The position numbers were made by a program, and so were the translations under genes. Below the pieces are notes generated by a model. It had not been told where the DNA came from, did no database searches, and saw only the letters and a list, made by a program, of their open reading frames with translations. 64,000 nt of DNA from Salpingoeca rosetta (Eukaryota > Protista > Choanoflagellata), in NCBI GenBank assembly GCA_033442325.1, contig JAWQFM010000010.1, forward strand, positions 1,664,293 to 1,728,292. Direction: 5' to 3'. Within the stretch, counting starts at the first letter, position 1, and the number at the start of each line of letters is the position of its first letter. Positions 1,712-17,794 of the stretch are shown piece by piece.

Positions 1712-2172
1712 GCCCGTCTGCCTGTGCTGTGTGGATGGATGGAAGGATGGATGGAAGTGGGGTGAAGCAGCAAGTTGTGTGCAGTGGCAATGCTGTGTCG
1801 TGGCAAAGTTGCTCCTGTCTTCTTCTTCTTCTTCCATTTCCGTTCCAGTTTTTTTTTTCGTTCGCACAAAGTGCGGCAGTGGCAGTCCTTGTGGTGTGCC
1901 TTCAACCTCGTCCCTTCCCTCCCTCCCCCCCCCCATACCTCCCTTCCCTCCGTTCTGTCGTTCCTTTCCCTCTCCCTGACTCCTGCGTGTGTGCGTTGGC
2001 GCTTACTTGTGGTTGGTCAACAGGCAGGCGGTTGTTGTTCAATTCAACAGACTGCAACACAAAGAGATTGGCAGAACACGGTGTGGTGGAGCTGTGTGTT
2101 TGCAGCATCGTGGCAGCAGTGTGCAGGGACTTGTGGTGGTGGGGATTGGCCGTGTCATGGCCTTGCGCGGCT

Positions 2173-6208
<4,036 letters not shown>

Positions 6209-7832: not shown

Positions 7833-10022
7833 GTGTGTGTTTTGGTACTCGTGGATCGTGCGCGTCAGCGAGGAGCCGCGTTGGTACTCATGACATGACA
7901 TGCTTCATACTGTGTGACACAGGCGACATTCGGTCTGAGGACAGCGTGCGCGCAGCTATTGACGCGACGGTGGACAAGTTTGGCGGTATCGACATTCTCG
8001 TCAACAACGCCAGCGCCATTAACACATCAGGTGGGCAGTCGATCATAATGTGTGTGTGTCTATGTGTGTCTGTGTGTCTGTGTACCTTTGTCTGTGATTG
8101 TTTATGTCTGTGTTTGACGCTTTCTCGCGACTATCTATGCCACGCACCGTGTCCACACCAATTGCATGTGTACACGCTTGGCCCACATGCACCGCAACTC
8201 ACACGCACGCACGCACACATACACTCACACACATACACTCACACGCACGTACGCACGCATGAACACACACACACTCACTCGCACACACGATGACAGACAC
8301 TGAATCTGTTGAGATGAAGCGGTATGATCTGATGCACACCATCAACGAGCGTGGCACATTCATGTGCACAAAGCTCTGTCTCCCACACCTCAAGAAGGTG
8401 CAGTACACTGGTGCACGCATGCAAGATTTAGGTGGCATAGCCATCCACACAGCTGTGCTGCCGTGTCTGTTTGCGTGCATCTGCGCGGGTGTGTGCGAAC
8501 GCCTGATCCACAATCCGCTCCCCCCCCCCCTAAATCTTTGTGTCATTTGTTTGTCTGCCTGGCCGATGGTGTTCACGTGAACATTCGCACGCGTGACTCA
8601 CTTGCTTCTCTTCCACCACGGGTTTTGGGTTTTGTTTGATTGCACGACAGAGCGACAATGCGCATGTGCTGACGCTGGCGCCTCCGCTCTTCAACCTGGA
8701 TGAGAAATGGTGCCACCACACCCGTGCATGCACCTGCACACTGCTCCCAAATGCTTTGCATCTTGTGATGGCAGCATTTGCATGATTGGACAAGCTCATA
8801 CTCCCATGCCATGGTGCAAGTGCCTGTTGTGCGCACGCATATCCCTCACATTACCAACCGTCACCACTCCGTCACAGGTTCCAGCACCACACCGCATACA
8901 CCACGTCCAAGTATGGTATGGCCATGTGTGTCCTCGGACACAGCGGTGAGTTTGCACCTGCTTGTGTGTGTATTGAGTGTGTATTGTGTGTGTGTGTGTG
9001 TGTATTGTGTGTATTGTGTGTGTGTGTGTGTTTATGTGGCGTCTTTGATTTCGCCAGCCATGATGCTGCGCTGTAGTACACTGCCCTGCTGTTTCTCACG
9101 TGTTGATTGATGATGACAACAGCGGAATTCCGGCCCTTTAACATCGGCGTCAACGCCCTTTGGCCACGGTAACACACGCGCCTGCCGCAGTCTGTGTGTG
9201 TGTGTGTGTGTGTGTGTCCGTGTGTGTCCGTGTGTGTGCGCGCGCTTTTGTTTGCTGCCACCAAATCGCGCGTGGCGCAACTATTGTGTGGGGGGCGGTG
9301 TCATACATGCACGCTTACACGCACACGCTCGTCACCTCTCCGGCCATATATGCAGGACGACGATTGCCACCGCTGCGCTGCAGAATGTGCTCGGTGGTGA
9401 TGCAATGATGAAGATGTAGGTCTCTGTGTCTATATGTGTATGTGTATGTGTCTGTGTCTGTGTGTGTGTGTGTCTGTGTGTGTGCGTGTGTGTGTGTGTG
9501 TGTAATGTCGTGGAGTATCGTGTAGTGTGAAACATGCCTTGAAAACTTTTTCTCTTCTCTGTGCACAAACGTTGTGTAGTCCGTCCCCCACCCACTCACC
9601 CACACCTTCCATCTTTCTGGTGTGATTCGCGGCCACCGCAACAGTGCGCGCAAGCCGGAGATTATGGCGGACGCAGCCCACTTTATCCTGACGCGTCGCA
9701 GCGACAAGTGCACGGGCAACTTCTTTGTTGACGACGAAGTGCTTGCATCCGAGGTAAGCTTGGCATTTGGTTTCTTGCTTGTTTGTGTGTTGTGTGTGTG
9801 TATGTGTTGTGTGTGTGTGTATGTGTGTGTTGTGTGTGAGGAGGGACAGGCGGGTGATTAGGGAAGTGCCATCATGTCTCACCACTTCCTGCACACCTTT
9901 GCACACACCACACGCACACATCGACTGCTGCTGCTGCTCTGTAGGGTGTGCGTGATCTCCAGAAGTACAAGGTGGATCCAACACTGCCCGACAGTGAACT
10001 CTGCCCAGACTTTTTCGTCTGA
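6607..10022 (+). CDS. HSDL2: HSDL2-like short-chain dehydrogenase/reductase, multi-exon, no SCP2 domain
   Basis: FVTGASRGIGLAIALRAAQDGANV, AIAAKTVEPHPALPGTIYTAAEDIEKAGGQALP, GGIDILVNNASAI, catalytic YTTSK, VNALWPR, RKPEIMADAA, GNFFVDDEVL, ends PDFFV* at 10022. The start at 6607 is inferred from an in-frame first exon (MALPVSKAAG...MKRIPK|GT). Confidence 0.9.
6769..6867. repeat. 33-bp tandem repeat x3 in HSDL2 intron 1
   Basis: Unit tgtgcggttgtggtggtgggttctgtgtgtgta occurs three times. Confidence 0.85.
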
Positions 10023-10921
10023 TGGAACCCACGTTGCATTGAGTGCAGGGTTTCTGCTTCTTTCAGTCATGATCTCTTCTGTTCTTCTTCTGTTGTTCTG
10101 TTGTTCTGTTGTTCTGTTGTTCTGTTCTTTCGCTCCTCTCTTCTCATCACAACAACAACAACAAACACACAAACAAAACAAAACAAACAAACAAACAAAC
10201 AAACACACAAACACAAGCAAACAAACAAGCAAACAAAACAAACAAAACGCCCGCCGTGACCGTGTATTCCACGTAGTTTCCCACAGCTTTGCTGGTGAAG
10301 ATTTCCGTGAATTCTGCAAGAAACGAAGAAAAATTAGCTCGCTCTCTGCGGCACTTACAGGCACTTCCACTGTCCTCCAACAGTCCCCACCATAATTTCA
10401 CCACACCAAACCTTCGGCATTTTGCAACCAGCGACGCCCTCCCCCCCCCCTCCACACACACACACACACCCTGCCAAGAGTTTCCGCCCCCTTCTTCCCA
10501 CCCCCTTACACAACGTGTGCCCTCTATTGTTTTGCATTGCCACTGTAATAGCAGCAGAGGAGCCACAGCGGTGGTGGCTTTCGTTTCGTTGGCACAGCAC
10601 TCACAGCAGCAGTCCATTTCGCTTCATTTCATTTTCCACCTCCCTTACTCCACTGGGACCACCACTACAAGCCCCACGGTACAAGACAACCAGACCCAGA
10701 GAACCTGGCTTGCGCTCTGCGTTTGTGTGCTGTTTGTACTTCCTTCTCATGCTCCCCTCAGAATCCCCTCCCCCTCCTTCTGTGCGTTTGTGTTTAGCGC
10801 CCTCCCTTCGTTCCTGCCTTCGCGCCTTTCACTCACGGACTCACGGTATCTCCCTCTCCACGACACTTGCACCGGTTTGCTCTCGTGCTTCAGGTCAACA
10901 AAGACAAACGCCTCGCCAGCA

Positions 10922-13900
10922 ATGCACACCAAAACGCACGCGCTACTGCGTCGGCGTCGCGGTGTGGTTGCCTCCGCGCCGTCCGCCTCAGCAGGCTCAA
11001 CAGACTGCCTGCGTTCACGAGCAACACCACGAGCTCTTCAGCAACAAGCGCAAGTGCAAGCACAAGCACGACGCTGCAGTCGCGGAGGCCTTGTGCCACC
11101 AGCAGCGGCCACGCAGCGGGCGGTCCCGCCACTGCGACGGGGCGGCTTCCTTTGCTTCGCGTTGCTGCTGCTGCACGCGTGCTTGCAGGCTTTGTCCAAC
11201 ACCGGAGTGCTGGCGCAGGCGACGCTGCAAGACTGCACATGCGCCACGCAGTGGACAACCGCAGGCTCGGGATGCTCTGAAACCATCCGGATTGCAGGCT
11301 GCGGGCTTGTCGAGCCGTGCGGCGGACCAACACCCTCCTTTCCCACCGGCTATCCCTACCCTCCGAACACCCACTTCTCCTCCTGGTGCAAGCTCGCGGC
11401 TTCCTGCGGCGCGTTTGGCTCATTTGACTACTGCGACCCGAGCGAAGGCGTCGATCTCTCAGGTCGCGGCATCGCAAGCGTCTCCAACTTTCGTTTCGGC
11501 CCAAACGTCACCGACATTGACCTCTCCAACAACCCCATCGACGACGCTTCGCTTTGCGACGCCCACTGGCCACCCTTTCTCGCCACCATTGACCTCAGCA
11601 ACACAAACCTGAAGAATCTCTCCTGCCTCGCTGCGCTCCCTGCCGGCGTGTCCATCGACATCTCCGGCAACCCCTTGGGCAACGAGCGGCTTTGCTCTGC
11701 GCGCTGGCCAGACACCTTGACCACCCTCACCATCCAAGACGCAAACATCACCGACGCCGACATCGCCGCCTGCTTTGTGCACACCGCCAAGTCGGCACTC
11801 CCCAATGCCACCGACAAGTTGGACCTGTCATACAACGGCATCACGCAGTTTGCGGACGGCGCTTTCCCGCAGGAGCTGCGTGATCTCTCTCTCGCACACA
11901 ACGCTCTCACAACCCTCAGCGGCCACAACTGGAAGCAAACAAGCATCACACACCTTCGGCTCAACGGCAACAAAATCTCATCCGTGGTCAACAACTCCTT
12001 CCCGGCGGGGCTTCGCAACCTGTACCTGAACGACAACGCCATCACCGCGCTGAGCTCTTCGCCCAACCTCTGGCCGCCCGGCCTCGCAGACCTCTTCCTC
12101 AGCGACAACAGCATCACGTCAATTGCCGGGCAGACATGGCCCGTCAACATCACCAGGCTGACCCTGTCCAACAACCTTCTCATGTCCATCGACAATCAGA
12201 CGTGGCCAACAAGGCTTCAGGCCCTCACCCTTTACAGCAACGCCATCACGTCCGTGCAGGCTCAAACATGGCCGCCAACAATCACCTTGCTGCGCTTGGA
12301 CGACAACAGGCTCACTTCCATCGCTGGTCAGACATGGCCGTCCGCCTTGCAGGAGCTACAGCTCTTCAGCAACAATATCGAAGCGCTTGAAGGACAGGTC
12401 TGGCCGGCGAACTTGGCATACTTGAATGTTGAAAACAACCGCATCGACCGCTTGCAGGGCCACGTCTTTCCTGACACGCTTCTGTACCTCTACGCCCGCC
12501 GCAACAACATCACCAGCGTCGTCAACAACACATGGCCGGCGCACGTGGAGCAGCTGTGGCTCGGGTACAACAACATCACCTTTATCGACACGTTGCCAGC
12601 AAGCGCAACCGACATTCGGCTCAACAACAACCGCATTTCCTCCGTCCACGGCCTCACCTGGCCAGCAAACCTCGACACCCTGTATCTGTCCTACAATCCA
12701 CTGTCGTCTGTGGACGGCCAAGTGTGGCCAACCACCCTCGCCCGTCTTGAGCTGGAACACACCCAGATCACCAGCATCAGCAACCAGGTGTTCCCAGACT
12801 CCCTCATCTACCTCTACGCGCAGCACAGCAACATCAACAGTATTTCCAACGTCACGTGGCCGTCTGCCATGGTGGATGCCTGGTTCAGCTTCAACAACAT
12901 CGCAACCGTCGATGCCTGGCCCGCCAGCGTGCAGAGGATCAGGCTGGATGGCAACCGCATCACAAGCATTGATGATGTGCTGTCAGCATGGCCCGCCGAC
13001 CTCTACTACCTTGACCTTGACTTCAACCAACTGCAGCACATCCACAGCCAGGCGTTCCCAGACTCGTTGCTGTACCTCTATGTCAGCAGCAACAACCTCA
13101 CCAGCGTCACCAACGTGACCTGGCCAGCGGCCATGCAGGAGATCGCCTTAAGCAACAACTCCCTCACGTCTACTGCTGTCAACAGTTTCCCTGCCACGGT
13201 GTCATCCCTACGACTCGACCGCAACCGCTTCCAGCAAGTCCCTGCCGCACCGTTACCTGCAGGCTTGACCGGCCTGACGCTTGCGTGGAACAGCATCACC
13301 TCCATCGCAAACCAGTCGTGGCCACCCACCCTCACCACGCTCGACCTCTCTCGCAACAACATCGCCAGCATCGACGGGCAGCAGTGGTCGTCCGCCATGT
13401 CACTGCTGATCCTCAGCCACAACGCCATCGCCAGCCTTGCGGGGCAGGCCTGGCCGCCCGCCTTGGAGCAGCTTGACCTCCAGGCCAACAACATCTCAGA
13501 TGTCTCCAACCCGACGTGGCCCGCAACGCTTTTCGGCCTTTTTCTGCAGCACAACCGCATCACCTCCCTTGACAATGTCGCCTTGCCTAGCAATGTTGAA
13601 AGCGTGAACCTCTTCAACAACAGCATCACCAGCATCCCAGCCAACGTGAGCTGGCCCCCTGCTGCAGAAAACATCTATCTGCAAGACAACGCAATCACCG
13701 CCATTGGCGAGCAGCATCACTGGCCACCGTCCCTCATGGATCTTTTCCTGCACAGAAACAGCATTCGCCAGGTCGACCACCTTGTGTGGCCTTCCACCCT
13801 GAGGCGCTTGAGCTTGGCAAACAACTCCATCGCCACCGTCACGACGCCCTGGCCAGAAGAGCTGACGCTGCTCTACCTTGCAGGGAACGTGCTCAGCACT

Positions 13901-16900
13901 TTTGACCATCATGTGTGGCCACAGTCACTGCGCTTCCTGACCCTGGACAACAACAACCTCACGTCAGTGCGCAACCAGACATGGCCGCCGACCCTTGAGT
14001 TTCTTTCGCTCACAAACAACACGCTGGGGTTTGACGGCATCTACAACCAGTCCTGGCCGCAAACCCTCACGCAGCTCTTCCTTGACGGTACAGGCATCGG
14101 CGACATCTCCACCCAGCGCTGGCCTTACACCCTGACCACGCTCCGGCTTGACCGCAACAACATTTCCAACCTGTCTGGCCAGCAGTGGCCGCGCTCGCTG
14201 TCTGAGCTGACGCTCTCCTTCAACGCCATTGCAGACATTTCCACCCAGGTGTGGCCAGACACGCTGACCGCGCTGCTCCTCGACAACAACCGCATCAGCA
14301 CTCTTGACGGGGTGTCCTGGCCACGCTCGTTGAAGCTGCTTCACCTGCACAATAACACCATCGCGCGGCTGGGCCCCCAGGTGTGGCCTTTGCGTCTGGA
14401 CCTCTTGCGGCTGGAGAACAACAACCTGACCCAGGTGTCGGTGCAGCAGTGGCCGCAGACGCTTCGGCGCCTGTCACTGGGCTACAACTCCATCCGCACG
14501 CTTCCAATCATGTCCTGGCCAGGTTCTCTCGAGTTGCTGGATCTCGCTGACAATGCATTGACCCGCCTGGGTCAACAGCTTTGGCCCAGCAGCCTGCGCA
14601 ACCTCCTGCTCGCCAACAACAGCCTCCCGACGATCGACGATCAAGTGTTCCCACCACAGCTCGAAACACTCTTCCTGCACAATAACCTTCTCACCAGCCT
14701 GCCCTCTGCTCCTGGGTTCTGGCCCGCGGACTTGCGCGTTCTGTCGCTGCCGCATAACTACATCACAAGCATTGACGGACAGCACTGGCCGATGAGACTG
14801 CAGAGTCTTCATCTGCAGAACAACTCCTTCGCCAGCATCGACGACCAGCAGTGGCCCCCACACCTGGAGGATTTGAGCCTGGAGCAGAACGGCATCACGT
14901 CCATTGCCAACCAGCAGTGGCCAGCCACCCTTCGCACCCTCTGGCTCCACAACAACCCACTCGGCAGCATCCAAGGACAGCAGTGGCCCGCAGGTCTGAA
15001 GCTGTTACACCTCCAGGCAACCGACATCGACGACATTGAGTCCCAGCAGTGGCCCGAGTCTCTTGAAGAGTTGCACCTGGGCGGCAATGCGATTTGCGAT
15101 ATTGCAACGCAGACTTGGCCATCCACACTTCGCATCCTGTCATTGAGCGACAACTGCATCAGCGACATTGAGAACCAGGCGTGGCCGCGCAACTTGGAGG
15201 AGCTCACGATCGACGGTAACCGCATTTCCACCATCCGCACACAGGTCTGGCCTGCGTCGCTGGAGACGCTGTCCCTTTCCGAGAACTTTATTCAAGACAT
15301 TGAGGGGCAAGTTTGGCCAGAGCGCCTGTTGCGGTTCTACTTTGCACAAAACCTCCTCACCAGCCTCGTTGGTCAGACATGGCCGGAGGGCTTGCTGCTG
15401 CTGGCGCTGTACGACAACGCCATTACGCAACTGGGCGTTCAACACTGGCCCGAGACGCTGGTTGATCTGAACCTCAACGCAAACGCGCTGACGACCGTTG
15501 ATGATCAAACGTGGCCCGCCAGCCTTCGCAAGCTTAGCCTGAACGACAACATGTTGCAGCGCTTCAACGCAGACACTTTGCCGCGTGCGCTAGAGAGGCT
15601 GGGGCTCGCAAACAACCGCATCACCAGCATCGACAGCACACGATGGCCAAACCAGCTGCGCATTCTCTCCTTGGAATCGAACCTGATCACGGACATATCC
15701 CAGCAAGAGTGGCCGTCTGCGCAACCCCTCACCCTTCGACTCAGCGACAACCGTATCACCAGCATCAGCAGCGTGACCTGGCCCCCCTTTCTAACTGGGC
15801 TCGGCCTTGACGGCAACGAGATTACGAGCATCAAGGGCCAAGCGTGGCCTTCGCAGCTGGTTGTGCTTTACTTGCACAACAACCTGATTGACAGCACCAG
15901 CAACCAGGCCTGGCCCGCCACCATACGGGTCCTTACCCTTGGAGGGAACCGCCTGACCACCGTGGCGAATCAGCGCTGGCCGATTGCGCTTGAACAGTTG
16001 CGATTGGACAACAACGCCATTTCCGTCATTGGTCGCCAGGCGTGGCCCCCAGGCTTGGTTGACTTGCGGCTCGGTCGCAACGCAATCACCTTCAATGACA
16101 CGGACAGCCGCGCTGCTTTTCGAAACGCCACTTCCCTGCTTGTGCTGGACTTGTCGTCGAACGACATCCAGAGCCTGGATGGCGTTGTGCTGCCACCCTC
16201 GCTGCAGCAACTTGCGCTCACGAATAACAGGCTTGGTAACCTCTCTCAGCACGTGCAGTGGCCCACGCAGCTCAGCCTCCTCATCCTGGACGCCAACCCG
16301 TGGGATGCGCTGATTCAAGGTCGAGCCAAGGCAAGGCTGCGTACCGGACAGGCTATCACCGCGCTCACCCACAACCTGCCGTGCAGCCTGGAGGAGCTCA
16401 GCATCAACCACGGTGCGCAGCCGTGGAACTGCACGCGCGAGGCCGTTCCCGCGGATGATTGTGATGACCTACGGCTGGCAGCTGGCGTCTGCACGGCTGA
16501 TGGCATTGACGGTGCATGCGTGATCAGAAACACCACCTCTGCCACGACATCTCCCACGATGAACGGCACGGGTGGTGCACAACAGCAGGAACAGTACATC
16601 TGGACGTGCCGGCTGACAGAGGACGGCGAAGCCATTTTGAAAGCCCAGGATGTGGTGCGGACCGACACCTCCCAGCAAGCTGAATCTCGAACCAACGCGT
16701 TTTACGGCGTGATCGCTGGCGTGTGTGGCGGAGCTGCCGTGCTGCTCTTCTGGCTGTTCCGAAAGCAAGCAACGAAGCTGTGGATGCTGCTGGTAATTAT
16801 CTCGCTGTTTGACATGTGCACGGACTGGGGGTTCTGGGGCATTGCCCTGACAGCGACCGGCTTCAAAGACAGCTACAACTGCGTGACGTCTGAGCCTGTC

Positions 16901-17794
16901 TACCGGTGTGAAGGTGCCAGCGCTGGCTTTGCCTGTGACGGGTATGGCGACCTCAAGAGCCCGTGTCAGGGCATTGCGTTCGCTCCCTCAGATGCGCAGA
17001 ATGAGTGCGAGTGCCACCGACACACATGCTACACGGGCCTGGTGGAGTTTGCTGAGGAAGGGGCTTTCTTAAACATTGAGAATGTGTGCAACCCAACAAC
17101 CACGAGAGTGGAAGGGGCAGTCGTTGCTGTCAGTTTAGACGAGTCGTGCACCTCCTTTGGGTCACTGGACGATTATGTGAACGCCACGTGCGGGTACCTG
17201 AATGCGGAGCATCCCAACGCCACGGGAACAAACGAGTGTGAGTGCAATGGAGGCACGTGCGAAATTGTTCCCGGTGCAAGCGGCACATGTCGAGGGTTTT
17301 ATGGCGGCAACTACCAGGCCTTGGTCTGGGCGGCGTTTGCGTCCATTGTCCTTGGCTCTATCGTATTTGTTGTTGAGACGTTGAGGAAGATGGTGGAGTA
17401 CTGGCGCAGGCGCAACATCGTTCACTTGGGCAATGAGTTGGCTGCTGATGGCCAGGCGGGAAAACCCGGCGTCATCCTCAATCCGGCGTTTGTCACTAAC
17501 GACGGCAATGATAATGGCAATGATAATGGCAACGGCGGGCAGAAACCAACAAGGAACCCTCCCCCGCCAGCAGATGCGGTGGAGATGGAACCGTGCGGCT
17601 GTATCGAAGTGGAAGACAGGGTATCGTTTGCGCTGAAACTGGTGCGATTGTTCTGTGAAGACATCCCGCAGCTCTCGGTGCAGGTCATTTATTTGACTGT
17701 CCTTGGACAAGAAGGCGAGCCATCAGCCATTGTGAGCTTGGTTGCGACATGTGTCTCCATCATCATCACCATCGTGTTCATCACGCGCGCTTAG
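10922..17794 (+). CDS. Intronless ~2290-aa leucine-rich-repeat multi-pass membrane protein (Cys module, ~70-75 22-aa LRRs, XK-like membrane domain)
   Basis: Uninterrupted ORF with first ATG at 10922. Hydrophobic signal-like segment FLCFALLLLHACLQAL. LRR consensus WPxxLxxLxLxxNxIxxIxxQx. Several hydrophobic helices at the C-terminus with FDMCTDW and EDIPQLSVQ motifs. Confidence 0.9.
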   Translation: MHTKTHALLRRRRGVVASAPSASAGSTDCLRSRATPRALQQQAQVQAQARRCSRGGLVPPAAATQRAVPPLRRGGFLCFALLLLHACLQALSNTGVLAQATLQDCTCATQWTTAGSGCSETIRIAGCGLVEPCGGPTPSFPTGYPYPPNTHFSSWCKLAASCGAFGSFDYCDPSEGVDLSGRGIASVSNFRFGPNVTDIDLSNNPIDDASLCDAHWPPFLATIDLSNTNLKNLSCLAALPAGVSIDISGNPLGNERLCSARWPDTLTTLTIQDANITDADIAACFVHTAKSALPNATDKLDLSYNGITQFADGAFPQELRDLSLAHNALTTLSGHNWKQTSITHLRLNGNKISSVVNNSFPAGLRNLYLNDNAITALSSSPNLWPPGLADLFLSDNSITSIAGQTWPVNITRLTLSNNLLMSIDNQTWPTRLQALTLYSNAITSVQAQTWPPTITLLRLDDNRLTSIAGQTWPSALQELQLFSNNIEALEGQVWPANLAYLNVENNRIDRLQGHVFPDTLLYLYARRNNITSVVNNTWPAHVEQLWLGYNNITFIDTLPASATDIRLNNNRISSVHGLTWPANLDTLYLSYNPLSSVDGQVWPTTLARLELEHTQITSISNQVFPDSLIYLYAQHSNINSISNVTWPSAMVDAWFSFNNIATVDAWPASVQRIRLDGNRITSIDDVLSAWPADLYYLDLDFNQLQHIHSQAFPDSLLYLYVSSNNLTSVTNVTWPAAMQEIALSNNSLTSTAVNSFPATVSSLRLDRNRFQQVPAAPLPAGLTGLTLAWNSITSIANQSWPPTLTTLDLSRNNIASIDGQQWSSAMSLLILSHNAIASLAGQAWPPALEQLDLQANNISDVSNPTWPATLFGLFLQHNRITSLDNVALPSNVESVNLFNNSITSIPANVSWPPAAENIYLQDNAITAIGEQHHWPPSLMDLFLHRNSIRQVDHLVWPSTLRRLSLANNSIATVTTPWPEELTLLYLAGNVLSTFDHHVWPQSLRFLTLDNNNLTSVRNQTWPPTLEFLSLTNNTLGFDGIYNQSWPQTLTQLFLDGTGIGDISTQRWPYTLTTLRLDRNNISNLSGQQWPRSLSELTLSFNAIADISTQVWPDTLTALLLDNNRISTLDGVSWPRSLKLLHLHNNTIARLGPQVWPLRLDLLRLENNNLTQVSVQQWPQTLRRLSLGYNSIRTLPIMSWPGSLELLDLADNALTRLGQQLWPSSLRNLLLANNSLPTIDDQVFPPQLETLFLHNNLLTSLPSAPGFWPADLRVLSLPHNYITSIDGQHWPMRLQSLHLQNNSFASIDDQQWPPHLEDLSLEQNGITSIANQQWPATLRTLWLHNNPLGSIQGQQWPAGLKLLHLQATDIDDIESQQWPESLEELHLGGNAICDIATQTWPSTLRILSLSDNCISDIENQAWPRNLEELTIDGNRISTIRTQVWPASLETLSLSENFIQDIEGQVWPERLLRFYFAQNLLTSLVGQTWPEGLLLLALYDNAITQLGVQHWPETLVDLNLNANALTTVDDQTWPASLRKLSLNDNMLQRFNADTLPRALERLGLANNRITSIDSTRWPNQLRILSLESNLITDISQQEWPSAQPLTLRLSDNRITSISSVTWPPFLTGLGLDGNEITSIKGQAWPSQLVVLYLHNNLIDSTSNQAWPATIRVLTLGGNRLTTVANQRWPIALEQLRLDNNAISVIGRQAWPPGLVDLRLGRNAITFNDTDSRAAFRNATSLLVLDLSSNDIQSLDGVVLPPSLQQLALTNNRLGNLSQHVQWPTQLSLLILDANPWDALIQGRAKARLRTGQAITALTHNLPCSLEELSINHGAQPWNCTREAVPADDCDDLRLAAGVCTADGIDGACVIRNTTSATTSPTMNGTGGAQQQEQYIWTCRLTEDGEAILKAQDVVRTDTSQQAESRTNAFYGVIAGVCGGAAVLLFWLFRKQATKLWMLLVIISLFDMCTDWGFWGIALTATGFKDSYNCVTSEPVYRCEGASAGFACDGYGDLKSPCQGIAFAPSDAQNECECHRHTCYTGLVEFAEEGAFLNIENVCNPTTTRVEGAVVAVSLDESCTSFGSLDDYVNATCGYLNAEHPNATGTNECECNGGTCEIVPGASGTCRGFYGGNYQALVWAAFASIVLGSIVFVVETLRKMVEYWRRRNIVHLGNELAADGQAGKPGVILNPAFVTNDGNDNGNDNGNGGQKPTRNPPPPADAVEMEPCGCIEVEDRVSFALKLVRLFCEDIPQLSVQVIYLTVLGQEGEPSAIVSLVATCVSIIITIVFITRA

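What the first reader, a model, noticed from the sequence alone, without database searches (positions are those of the whole stretch)
16699..17794. Giant LRR ectodomain fused to an XK/Xkr-scramblase-like membrane domain
Seen: after the LRRs come a TM helix, a second helix with FDMCTDW, a ~150-aa Cys-rich loop, a third helix, a polar loop, then LVRLFCEDIPQLSVQVIYL (E at 17657) and a final helix (AIVSLVATCVSI). No kinase or TIR domain is present. Known: XK-family proteins carry D-x-x-(S/T)-D in the first helix and E-(S/A)-x-P-Q-L-x-L-Q in a later helix, followed by an S-rich helix. Inference: a receptor whose output is a compact XK-like lipid scramblase or transport module gated by ligand binding (for example prey or partner cells), possibly an undescribed recognition-to-membrane-remodelling system.
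Basis: partly seen in the sequence, partly recalled or inferred. Interest (0 to 1): 0.75.

Follow-up and report, generated by a model that had tools for sequence, protein, structure and literature searches.

The report
LRR receptor with half-Xkr-like membrane module
A choanoflagellate gene joins a giant leucine-rich-repeat ectodomain to a small four-helix membrane module that keeps the buried acidic residues which animal Xkr lipid scramblases use to bind calcium; this receptor design is undescribed, and its kinship to Xkr is likely but not proven.

Summary
One intronless gene (Met at 10922, stop at 17794, 2290 aa) encodes about 60-70 LRRs, an anchor helix, and then four helices carrying FDMCTDW and EDIPQL at the stated coordinates. 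There is no kinase or TIR domain.

Both motifs are conserved across 25 relatives: D38 20/21, D42 21/21, E320 25/25, Q324 23/25. The relatives include other choanoflagellates (Salpingoeca infusionum, Bicosta minor) and short stand-alone four-helix proteins. One spliced stand-alone copy lies in this genome.

The motifs, their helix order and the inferred topology match the N-terminal four-helix repeat of Xkr4/8/9. There, the equivalent D, D and E bind extracellular Ca2+ and are required for scrambling.

Membership of the XK family is not shown:
- Pfam XK-related is below threshold (17.4 vs 24.8 bits).
- The module is half the size of an XK domain and lacks the re-entrant helix and the C-terminal plug.
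- A confident AF2 model (pLDDT 82) matches Xkr4 (Z 9.7) and XKR9 (Z 8.7) no better than generic helix bundles, and Foldseek finds nothing.

Scramblase activity is conjecture. Two relatives carry SH2 tails, which suggests the module can act as a transducer.

The scan has already reported the same design on a paralogue in this genome.

The parts
10922..17794 (+). Whole gene: 2290-aa intronless ORF from the first Met to the stop (signal-anchor, Cys-containing cap, LRR array, five-helix C-terminal region)
11500..16410 (+). Array of about 60-70 LRRs with a 22-residue period and a Q-x-W-P signature (58 core matches, 54 WP; approximate bounds)
   Evidence: Pfam LRR_8 E 4e-107, 28 stretches; period count
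16703..16759 (+). Anchor helix TMa (out to in), followed by the basic loop RKQATK
   Evidence: hydropathy 2.01; AF2 helix 2-21
16781..16849 (+). Helix TMb, equivalent to Xkr TM1: F-D38-M-C-T41-D42-W43
   Evidence: D38 20/21, T/S41 19/21, D42 21/21, W43 20/21 in alignment A3; AF2 helix 26-50, pLDDT about 90
16850..17314 (+). Extracellular Cys-rich loop: 14 Cys, two NECEC-x(3-4)-C units, 2 sequons. Predicted as a beta-rich domain.
   Evidence: no Pfam, PDB-sequence or Foldseek match
17315..17383 (+). Helix TMc, equivalent to Xkr TM2 (out to in), followed by the basic stretch RKMVEYWRRR
   Evidence: hydropathy 1.9-2.5; AF2 helix 205-250
17384..17626 (+). Cytosolic polar, disordered loop. No predicted re-entrant helix.
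   Evidence: pLDDT below 50 at 261-283; length varies among paralogues
17627..17701 (+). Helix TMd, equivalent to Xkr TM3: E320-D321-I-P323-Q324-L-S-V-Q328..Y331. A polar stripe runs along one helix face.
   Evidence: E 25/25, D 24/24, P 18/25, Q 23/25, Y/F331 25/25; Pfam PF09815 positions 120-175 align here; hhalign to stand-alone modules 98.9%
17723..17785 (+). Helix TMe, equivalent to Xkr TM4, Ser/Thr-rich (S346, T350, S353). The protein ends 2 residues later.
   Evidence: S346 22/24, S/T350 23/24; AF2 helix 341-363

Best explanation
The gene encodes a cell-surface receptor-like protein of a choanoflagellate.

Architecture: a giant LRR solenoid is tethered by one anchor helix to a four-helix membrane bundle. 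That bundle is most likely a distant, single-repeat relative of the N-terminal half (TM1-TM4) of animal XK/Xkr proteins.

The bundle buries an acidic and polar cluster at mid to outer membrane depth: D38 and D42 on its first helix, E320/D321/Q324/Q328 on its third, and S346/T350 on its fourth. In Xkr4/8/9 the same cluster binds extracellular Ca2+ and 'glues' TM1 to TM3.

A disulfide-rich beta domain is inserted in the first outer loop and lies next to the LRR base.

Inferred mechanism: ligand binding or pulling on the LRR and Cys-rich domain shifts the first helix against the third around the cation site. That switches the bundle, probably as an oligomer or with partners, between states. The output would be either a local membrane effect (lipid scrambling or thinning, or ion leak) or, in relatives with SH2 or CAP-Gly tails, recruitment of cytosolic signalling proteins.

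Shown: the architecture, the motif conservation, the family, and a confident four-helix model.
Inferred: the topology, the kinship to Xkr, cation binding and any output.
For: - Architecture and coordinates.
- Four LRR-fused paralogues in this genome and a spliced stand-alone copy.
- 27 relatives among 1.84 billion representative proteins, including Salpingoeca infusionum and Bicosta minor.
- Stand-alone four-helix proteins keep both motifs. hhalign of A1 against A2 gives 98.9%.
- Conservation counts.
- The Cys-rich, glycosylation-sequon loop must be extracellular, and basic residues follow TMa and TMc. This gives TMb in-to-out, as for Xkr TM1.
- Pfam XK-related reaches E 0.0023 on TMd-TMe at profile positions 120-175. 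It is the only recurrent non-LRR family, hitting 4 of 25 members.
- The AF2 model has pLDDT 81.8 and pTM 0.65.
- VIA search: Xkr4 9boj_B Z 9.7 (140 aligned, 17% id, rank 6); XKR9 7p16_A Z 8.7 over chain residues 8-185, the N-terminal repeat (17% id, rank 25). These are the two highest identities among the 50 rows.
- Literature: Xkr4 D123-V-G-T-D127 (TM1), E310 (TM3) and S339 (TM4) bind extracellular Ca2+ (PMC10495444). Xkr8 D26, D30 and E141 are required for scrambling, and helices alpha1, 2, 4 and 5 form the path (PMC8500837). XKR9 has two four-helix repeats, and its polar TM3 escapes hydropathy prediction (PMC8298096); TMd here does the same (mean hydropathy 1.12).
- ESM Atlas lead: a cluster of 259-aa protist proteins in which 40% of members carry PF09815 (score only 0.76).
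Against: - All Pfam XK hits are below the gathering score (17.4 vs 24.8 bits) and cover only two helices.
- Profile and single-sequence searches of PDB sequences find no Xkr.
- Foldseek finds no Xkr.
- The VIA Z-scores lie inside the range of unrelated or de novo four-helix bundles (Z 10-11), and the tool's own note says Z under about 13 for helical bundles may be generic.
- The module lacks the second repeat, the re-entrant helix IH1 and the C-terminal regulatory tail of Xkr.
- I could not measure D38/D42-E320 distances in the model.
- A Pfam XK search of the six-frame genome found no canonical XK gene here, although its controls did not ring either.
Confidence: 0.5

Rival explanations
1. The module is a lineage-specific four-helix anchor or oligomerisation module with no common ancestry with XK. 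Its buried acidic motifs arose by convergence, for example for cation binding or helix packing. Its job is to hold and assemble the LRR ectodomain and to pass signals to partners or cytosolic tails.
For: - No significant sequence link to Xkr exists: Pfam is sub-threshold and PDB sequence searches are blank.
- Foldseek is blank.
- The structural match is no better than to generic bundles.
- The module is half the size of XK and has no IH1.
- Relatives carry SH2 and CAP-Gly tails, so the output can be cytosolic.
Against: - There are coincidences at several levels: D-x-x-T-D in helix 1, E-x-x-P-Q-L-x-x-Q in helix 3 and Ser in helix 4, with the same order and topology.
- Pfam XK is the only recurrent family on the module.
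- Xkr4 and XKR9 are the highest-identity structural matches.
- Stand-alone copies without any ectodomain argue that the module has a function of its own.
Confidence: 0.3
2. One reading: the module is itself a lipid scramblase or transporter, gated by ligand binding to the LRR ectodomain. The system would turn recognition into membrane remodelling.
For: - In Xkr8 the proposed lipid path is formed by helices alpha1, 2, 4 and 5, that is, by the N-terminal repeat alone, and needs D26, D30 and E141 (PMC8500837). These residues are conserved here.
- The window protein has no cytosolic domain and ends 2 residues after the last helix, so any output must be in the membrane or through partners.
Against: - There is no functional evidence.
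- Purified XKR9 did not scramble in vitro and may need an unknown subunit (PMC8298096).
- A four-helix unit has never been shown to scramble lipids.
- Homologues use the same module in front of SH2 tails.
- The kinship to Xkr is itself unproven.
Confidence: 0.15
3. The module is a pannexin/LRRC8-like or other large-pore four-helix channel subunit joined to LRRs.
For: Pannexins give the longest structural alignments (9oqp_A Z 9.5, 178 aligned; 8gyq_A Z 8.9). LRRC8 channels also combine a four-helix domain with LRRs (established knowledge).
Against: - Identity is only 5-11% and rmsd 4.5-5.2 A.
- The second outer loop here is about 6 residues with no Cys, whereas pannexin-type channels need two Cys-bearing outer loops.
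- The LRRs here are extracellular and N-terminal, not cytosolic and C-terminal.
- There is no Pfam signal.
Confidence: 0.05

Closest known systems
XK / Xkr family (Pfam PF09815; Xkr4, Xkr8, XKR9, XK, CED-8), N-terminal repeat TM1-TM4
   Same: - D-x-x-T-D in the first helix, E-x-x-P-Q-L-x-x-Q in a polar third helix and a Ser-rich fourth helix.
- The same helix order and the same inferred in-out topology.
- The equivalent residues bind extracellular Ca2+ and are essential for scrambling in Xkr4 and Xkr8.
- Weak Pfam hits on TM3-TM4.
- Structural alignment to XKR9 residues 8-185 (Z 8.7) and to Xkr4 (Z 9.7).
   Different: - Only one four-helix unit instead of two (8 TM).
- No re-entrant helix IH1 or IH2.
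- No caspase-cleaved or phosphorylated C-terminal plug.
- An insert of about 150 aa, Cys-rich, in the TM1-TM2 loop.
- An extra anchor helix and a 2000-aa LRR ectodomain at the N-terminus.
- Below the Pfam threshold.
- Found in a choanoflagellate rather than an animal.
LRR-ectodomain receptors (Toll-like receptors, plant LRR-RLKs, choanoflagellate kinase-TLRs)
   Same: A large extracellular LRR solenoid with Cys caps, anchored in the membrane. Relatives couple it to pTyr-signalling domains (SH2).
   Different: - No TIR or kinase domain.
- Five membrane helices instead of one.
- An unusual 22-residue Q-x-W-P repeat.
- The window protein has essentially no cytosolic domain.
LRRC8 / pannexin four-helix channels
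   Same: A four-helix membrane domain combined with LRRs. There are middling structural alignments (Z 8-9.5).
   Different: - The LRRs are on the opposite side of the membrane and at the opposite end of the protein.
- The second outer loop is vestigial.
- There is no sequence signal.

Membership tests
XK/Xkr (PF09815) | Score at or above Pfam's gathering threshold for XK-related | tested here: not met
   17.4 bits vs 24.8, E 0.0023, residues 306-360 on profile 120-175/337. 4 of 25 family members hit, all sub-threshold.
XK/Xkr (PF09815) | Eight membrane helices in two four-helix repeats, each with a partly inserted helix (IH1, IH2) (PMC8298096) | tested here: not met
   The AF2 model has an anchor helix plus four helices only. 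The loop between the second and third bundle helices is disordered, with no inserted helix. Stand-alone relatives have only a 15-25-residue loop there.
XK/Xkr (PF09815) | D-x-x-T-D in TM1 (Xkr4 D123/D127, Xkr8 D26/D30) | tested here: met
   The window has D38-M-C-T-D42. Family counts: D 20/21, T/S 19/21, D 21/21. The Xkr residues come from PMC10495444 and PMC8500837.
XK/Xkr (PF09815) | E-x-x-P-Q in the polar TM3 (Xkr4 E310, Xkr8 E141/Q145) | tested here: met
   The window has E320-D-I-P-Q324. Family counts: E 25/25, P 18/25, Q 23/25. The Pfam alignment falls on this helix.
XK/Xkr (PF09815) | Ser/Thr of TM4 contributing to the Ca2+ site (Xkr4 S339, 29 residues after E310) | tested here: inconclusive
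   S346 (22/24) and S/T350 (23/24) lie 26 and 30 residues after E320. Residue-level equivalence could not be checked.
XK/Xkr (PF09815) | Fold match to solved Xkr structures that stands above unrelated folds | tested here: inconclusive
   VIA gives Xkr4 Z 9.7 (rank 6) and XKR9 Z 8.7 (rank 25, N-terminal repeat), the highest identities at 17%. Generic bundles score Z 10-11. Foldseek finds no Xkr.
XK/Xkr (PF09815) | Regulatory C-terminal tail (caspase site or plug) | tested here: not met
   The protein ends 2 residues after the last helix.
XK/Xkr (PF09815) | Phospholipid scrambling activity | not testable with these tools
   This needs cell or liposome assays.
LRR proteins (PF13855 and related) | Tandem LRRs above the Pfam threshold | tested here: met
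   LRR_8 E 4e-107 (350 bits, 28 stretches) and LRR_4 E 2e-66. 58 core matches, mostly 22 residues apart.
Pannexin/LRRC8 large-pore channels | Two Cys-bearing extracellular loops on a four-helix domain | tested here: not met
   The second outer loop is about 6 residues without Cys. Structural Z 8-9.5 at 5-11% identity.

The most novel reading that the evidence does not exclude
The four-helix module is a surviving single-repeat form of the XK fold that predates animals, so the eight-helix Xkr scramblases arose by duplication of such a unit. In choanoflagellates it is wired directly to a giant LRR ectodomain. Binding of a prey, partner-cell or bacterial ligand, with seawater Ca2+ at the D/D/E site, would then switch on local lipid scrambling or membrane remodelling. 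This would be a one-polypeptide recognition-to-membrane system with no known counterpart.
Probability: 0.15. Interest if true: 0.85.

Novelty: new variant of a known kind. Interest (0 to 1): 0.62.

Why it matters
Xkr scramblases expose the 'eat-me' lipid on dying animal cells. Their fold is described as novel, and their origin outside animals is not discussed in the structural papers read here.

[quoted passage not shown] It would give a candidate ancestor for the two-repeat fold. It would also give a minimal system in which to test what the conserved D/D/E calcium site does. This relative occurs both alone and fused to a large LRR ectodomain or followed by SH2 tails.

The fusion also adds a new receptor architecture (LRR, four-helix bundle, no kinase or TIR) to the choanoflagellate surface repertoire. 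That repertoire is relevant to how these cells sense bacteria, prey and each other.

No paper in the held library links choanoflagellates with XK-related proteins.

Tried and rejected
- AF2 with only the four paralogues gave pLDDT 42 and was discarded.
- The word-index homologue search of the module within full-length-sized proteins found nothing.
- With the short-module profile, that search found only 7 close relatives, none carrying PF09815.
- PDB sequence searches found no Xkr, only low-complexity or chance hits. I tried the paralogue profile, the short-module profile, the TMd-TMe peptide, P0025 and the Cys-rich loop.
- Foldseek against the PDB gave nothing at E 0.001 or better. The 'pdb_via' second look covered only 9 chains and was uninformative.
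- The Pfam XK model found nothing in the six-frame genome, but nothing rang in the control genomes either, so this says little.
- The ESM Atlas search on the whole module gave only low-score, unrelated clusters.
- The contig carrying P0022 gave no taxonomic clue. P0001 has no contig on record.
- The two exons of the stand-alone C3 gene were read separately and were not joined.
- The pannexin/LRRC8 reading was considered and rejected on loop anatomy.


Full report
**1. What is in the sequence**

The + strand is open from 10289 to 17794 (2501 codons). The only Met ahead of the hydrophobic signal-anchor is at 10922, which gives a 2290-aa protein in a single exon.

Pfam sees only leucine-rich repeats in the first 2100 residues: LRR_8 at E 4e-107 in 28 stretches, and LRR_4 at E 2e-66. 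It finds no kinase or TIR domain. I counted 58 LRR cores, mostly 22 residues apart, and 54 W-P dipeptides.

The genome is 55.4 Mb in 68 contigs. The nearest named relatives of this protein fit that, as they come from Salpingoeca infusionum and Bicosta minor.

**2. The C-terminal 364 residues (window 16700-17791)**

- An anchor helix, TMa (16703-16759).
- TMb with F-D38-M-C-T-D42-W (16781-16849).
- A loop of about 154 residues with 14 Cys, two N-glycosylation sequons and two NECEC-x(3-4)-C units.
- TMc (17315-17383).
- A polar loop of about 80 residues.
- TMd with E320-D-I-P-Q-L-S-V-Q, where E320 is at 17657 exactly as stated.
- The Ser/Thr-rich TMe (17723-17785), followed two residues later by the stop.

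The disulfide-rich, glycosylatable loop has to be extracellular, and basic residues follow TMa and TMc. The inferred topology is therefore: LRR outside, TMa out-to-in, TMb in-to-out, TMc out-to-in, TMd in-to-out, TMe out-to-in.

TMb and TMd are less hydrophobic than the others (mean 1.5 and 1.12). The polar, conserved TM3 of XKR9 likewise escaped hydropathy prediction (PMC8298096).

**3. The family**

This genome has four paralogues. All are giant LRR ORFs of 1845-3357 open codons with the same module.

A profile of the four modules was searched against 1.84 billion representative proteins and found only 27 relatives. They fall into two groups.
- LRR-bearing proteins with the same module and Cys-rich loop. 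P0004 (Bicosta minor) and P0005 continue after the module into SH2 domains, and P0005 also has a CAP-Gly domain.
- Short proteins of about 210-300 aa that are just the four helices, without the Cys-rich loop or any ectodomain. They still carry R-x-F-D-x-x-T-D-W and L-L-E-D-V-P-Q-L.

hhalign links the two groups at 98.9% probability. The short-module profile hits the window at both TMd-TMe (E 9e-10) and TMb (E 0.0075).

The same search uncovered a spliced stand-alone copy in this genome, on contig C3 minus strand. One exon carries FDVATDW, a shorter Cys loop and a second helix. A later exon carries FLLFEDLPQIIILIRY. A near-identical duplicate of the first exon lies 5.7 kb away beside an assembly gap. 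I read these exons separately and did not join them.

In the 25-sequence alignment A3 the motif positions are the most conserved of all:

| Position | Conservation |
|---|---|
| D38 | 20/21 |
| T/S41 | 19/21 |
| D42 | 21/21 |
| W43 | 20/21 |
| E320 | 25/25 |
| D321 | 24/24 |
| P323 | 18/25 |
| Q324 | 23/25 |
| Y/F331 | 25/25 |
| S346 | 22/24 |
| S/T350 | 23/24 |

E320, Q324, Q328 and Y331 fall on one helix face. D38/D42 and E320 sit at about the same depth counted from the cytosolic ends of their helices.

**4. Comparison with XK/Xkr: evidence for kinship**

According to the literature read here:
- XKR9 consists of two related repeats. Each has four membrane-spanning helices and one partly inserted helix, and TM3 is highly conserved and polar (PMC8298096).
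- In Xkr8, D26 and D30 (helix alpha1) and E137 and E141 (alpha4) are required for scrambling. Helices alpha1, 2, 4 and 5, that is the N-terminal repeat, form the proposed path (PMC8500837).
- In Xkr4, D123-V-G-T-D127 in TM1, E310 in TM3 and S339 in TM4 bind extracellular Ca2+, which 'glues' TM1 to TM3 (PMC10495444).

The choanoflagellate module has the same residues in the same helices, in the same order and with the same inferred orientation.

Pfam's XK-related model hits TMd-TMe at E 0.0023 (17.4 bits, profile positions 120-175 of 337). It is the only family apart from LRR and tail domains that recurs on the module, matching 4 of 25 members.

With the 25-sequence alignment, AlphaFold2 gave a confident model: pLDDT 81.8, pTM 0.65, helices at about 90, and a beta-rich Cys loop. 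An all-against-48,161-chain structural search gave two Xkr matches:
- Human Xkr4 at rank 6 (Z 9.7, 140 residues aligned).
- Rat XKR9 at rank 25 (Z 8.7, chain residues 8-185, which is its N-terminal repeat).

Both have 17% identity, the highest of the 50 rows listed.

A language-model search with a short module listed, at rank 3 of named clusters, a 259-aa protist cluster in which 40% of members carry PF09815. The score was only 0.76, so this is a lead and nothing more.

**5. Comparison with XK/Xkr: evidence against membership**

- Every Pfam hit is under the 24.8-bit threshold.
- No PDB Xkr sequence is found with profiles or peptides.
- Foldseek finds no Xkr.
- De novo and soluble four-helix bundles score Z 10-11 in the same list. 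The tool warns that Z under about 13 is common for helical bundles.
- The module is one repeat, not two.
- It has no inserted helix. Its cytosolic loop is disordered here and is only 15-25 residues in the stand-alone forms.
- It has no C-terminal regulatory tail.

I also could not inspect residue equivalences in the structural alignment.

I therefore do not file it as a member of the XK family. I rate true but distant kinship with the N-terminal repeat at about one in two, and convergence in an unrelated four-helix module at about one in three.

**6. How it most likely works**

Shown: a large LRR ectodomain, an anchor helix, a four-helix bundle with a conserved buried acidic and polar cluster, and a folded Cys-rich domain in the first outer loop. 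The same bundle also exists on its own and in front of SH2 or CAP-Gly tails.

Inferred: the cluster binds a cation, and Ca2+ is abundant in seawater. Movement of the LRR and Cys-rich domains on ligand binding would shift the first bundle helix against the third. The bundle, perhaps as a dimer that would mimic the two-repeat Xkr fold, would then change state.

The window protein has no cytosolic domain, so its output must be in the membrane or through partners. Lipid scrambling is one possibility, because the Xkr8 path lies in the equivalent helices. It is untested, no four-helix unit has been shown to scramble lipids, and purified XKR9 itself was inactive in vitro (PMC8298096). The SH2-tailed relatives show that the module can also serve as a transducer or anchor.

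**7. Novelty and context**

No paper in the held library connects choanoflagellates with XK-related proteins or scramblases of this kind.

The scan has already reported the same design on a paralogue elsewhere in this genome, with the same cautious verdict. That report is not independent evidence.

I class the finding as a new variant of a known kind: an XK-like single-repeat module in a new receptor architecture. Its interest is moderate to high and rests on a homology test and a functional assay that remain to be done.

Noticed in passing
G000:C3:1553600-1555123 (minus strand; loci L018, L022, L023); duplicate at C3:1548673-1549446: A spliced stand-alone gene carries the same module without LRRs. 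One exon has FDVATDW, a Cys loop of about 110 aa and a second helix. A later exon has FLLFEDLPQIIILIRY. The first exon is repeated almost identically 5.7 kb away, next to a run of N. This may be a tandem duplicate or an assembly artefact.
   Followed up: partly
P0004 (Bicosta minor, EukProt) and P0005: These relatives with the same LRR and module continue into cytosolic SH2 domains (E 4e-18 and 2e-24), and P0005 also has a CAP-Gly domain. This is an LRR / four-helix / SH2 architecture in choanoflagellates.
   Followed up: partly
window 16850-17314: The Cys-rich loop contains two NECEC-x(3-4)-C units, which looks like an internal duplication. AF2 predicts it at pLDDT about 85-95 as a beta-rich domain. 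It has no Pfam, PDB-sequence or Foldseek match and was not folded or searched on its own.
   Followed up: partly
L004 (G000:C6 paralogue), P0001, P0014, P0004, P0005: One subfamily has a conserved stretch after the last helix (L-A-N-R...H-G-G..G-K.F-V..F-S.G-G.I) with a further hydrophobic segment. Some also have a hydrophobic extreme C-terminus. The window protein lacks this tail.
   Followed up: no
L003 (G000:C4:1060156-1063902, minus strand): This paralogue, with a 3357-codon open frame, ends in a K-K-C-C-G-C-C motif that looks like a palmitoylation site. The locus also contains a run of N.
   Followed up: no
ESM Atlas result for P0029: A cluster of 259-aa protist proteins, most commonly from Foraminifera, has Pfam XK-related in 40% of its members. 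This hints that short XK-like proteins exist outside animals. The sequences could not be fetched.
   Followed up: no
window 10001-16000: GC skew is strongly negative (-0.16 to -0.27) over the LRR array. This is presumably a codon and repeat composition effect of the 22-residue unit.
   Followed up: no
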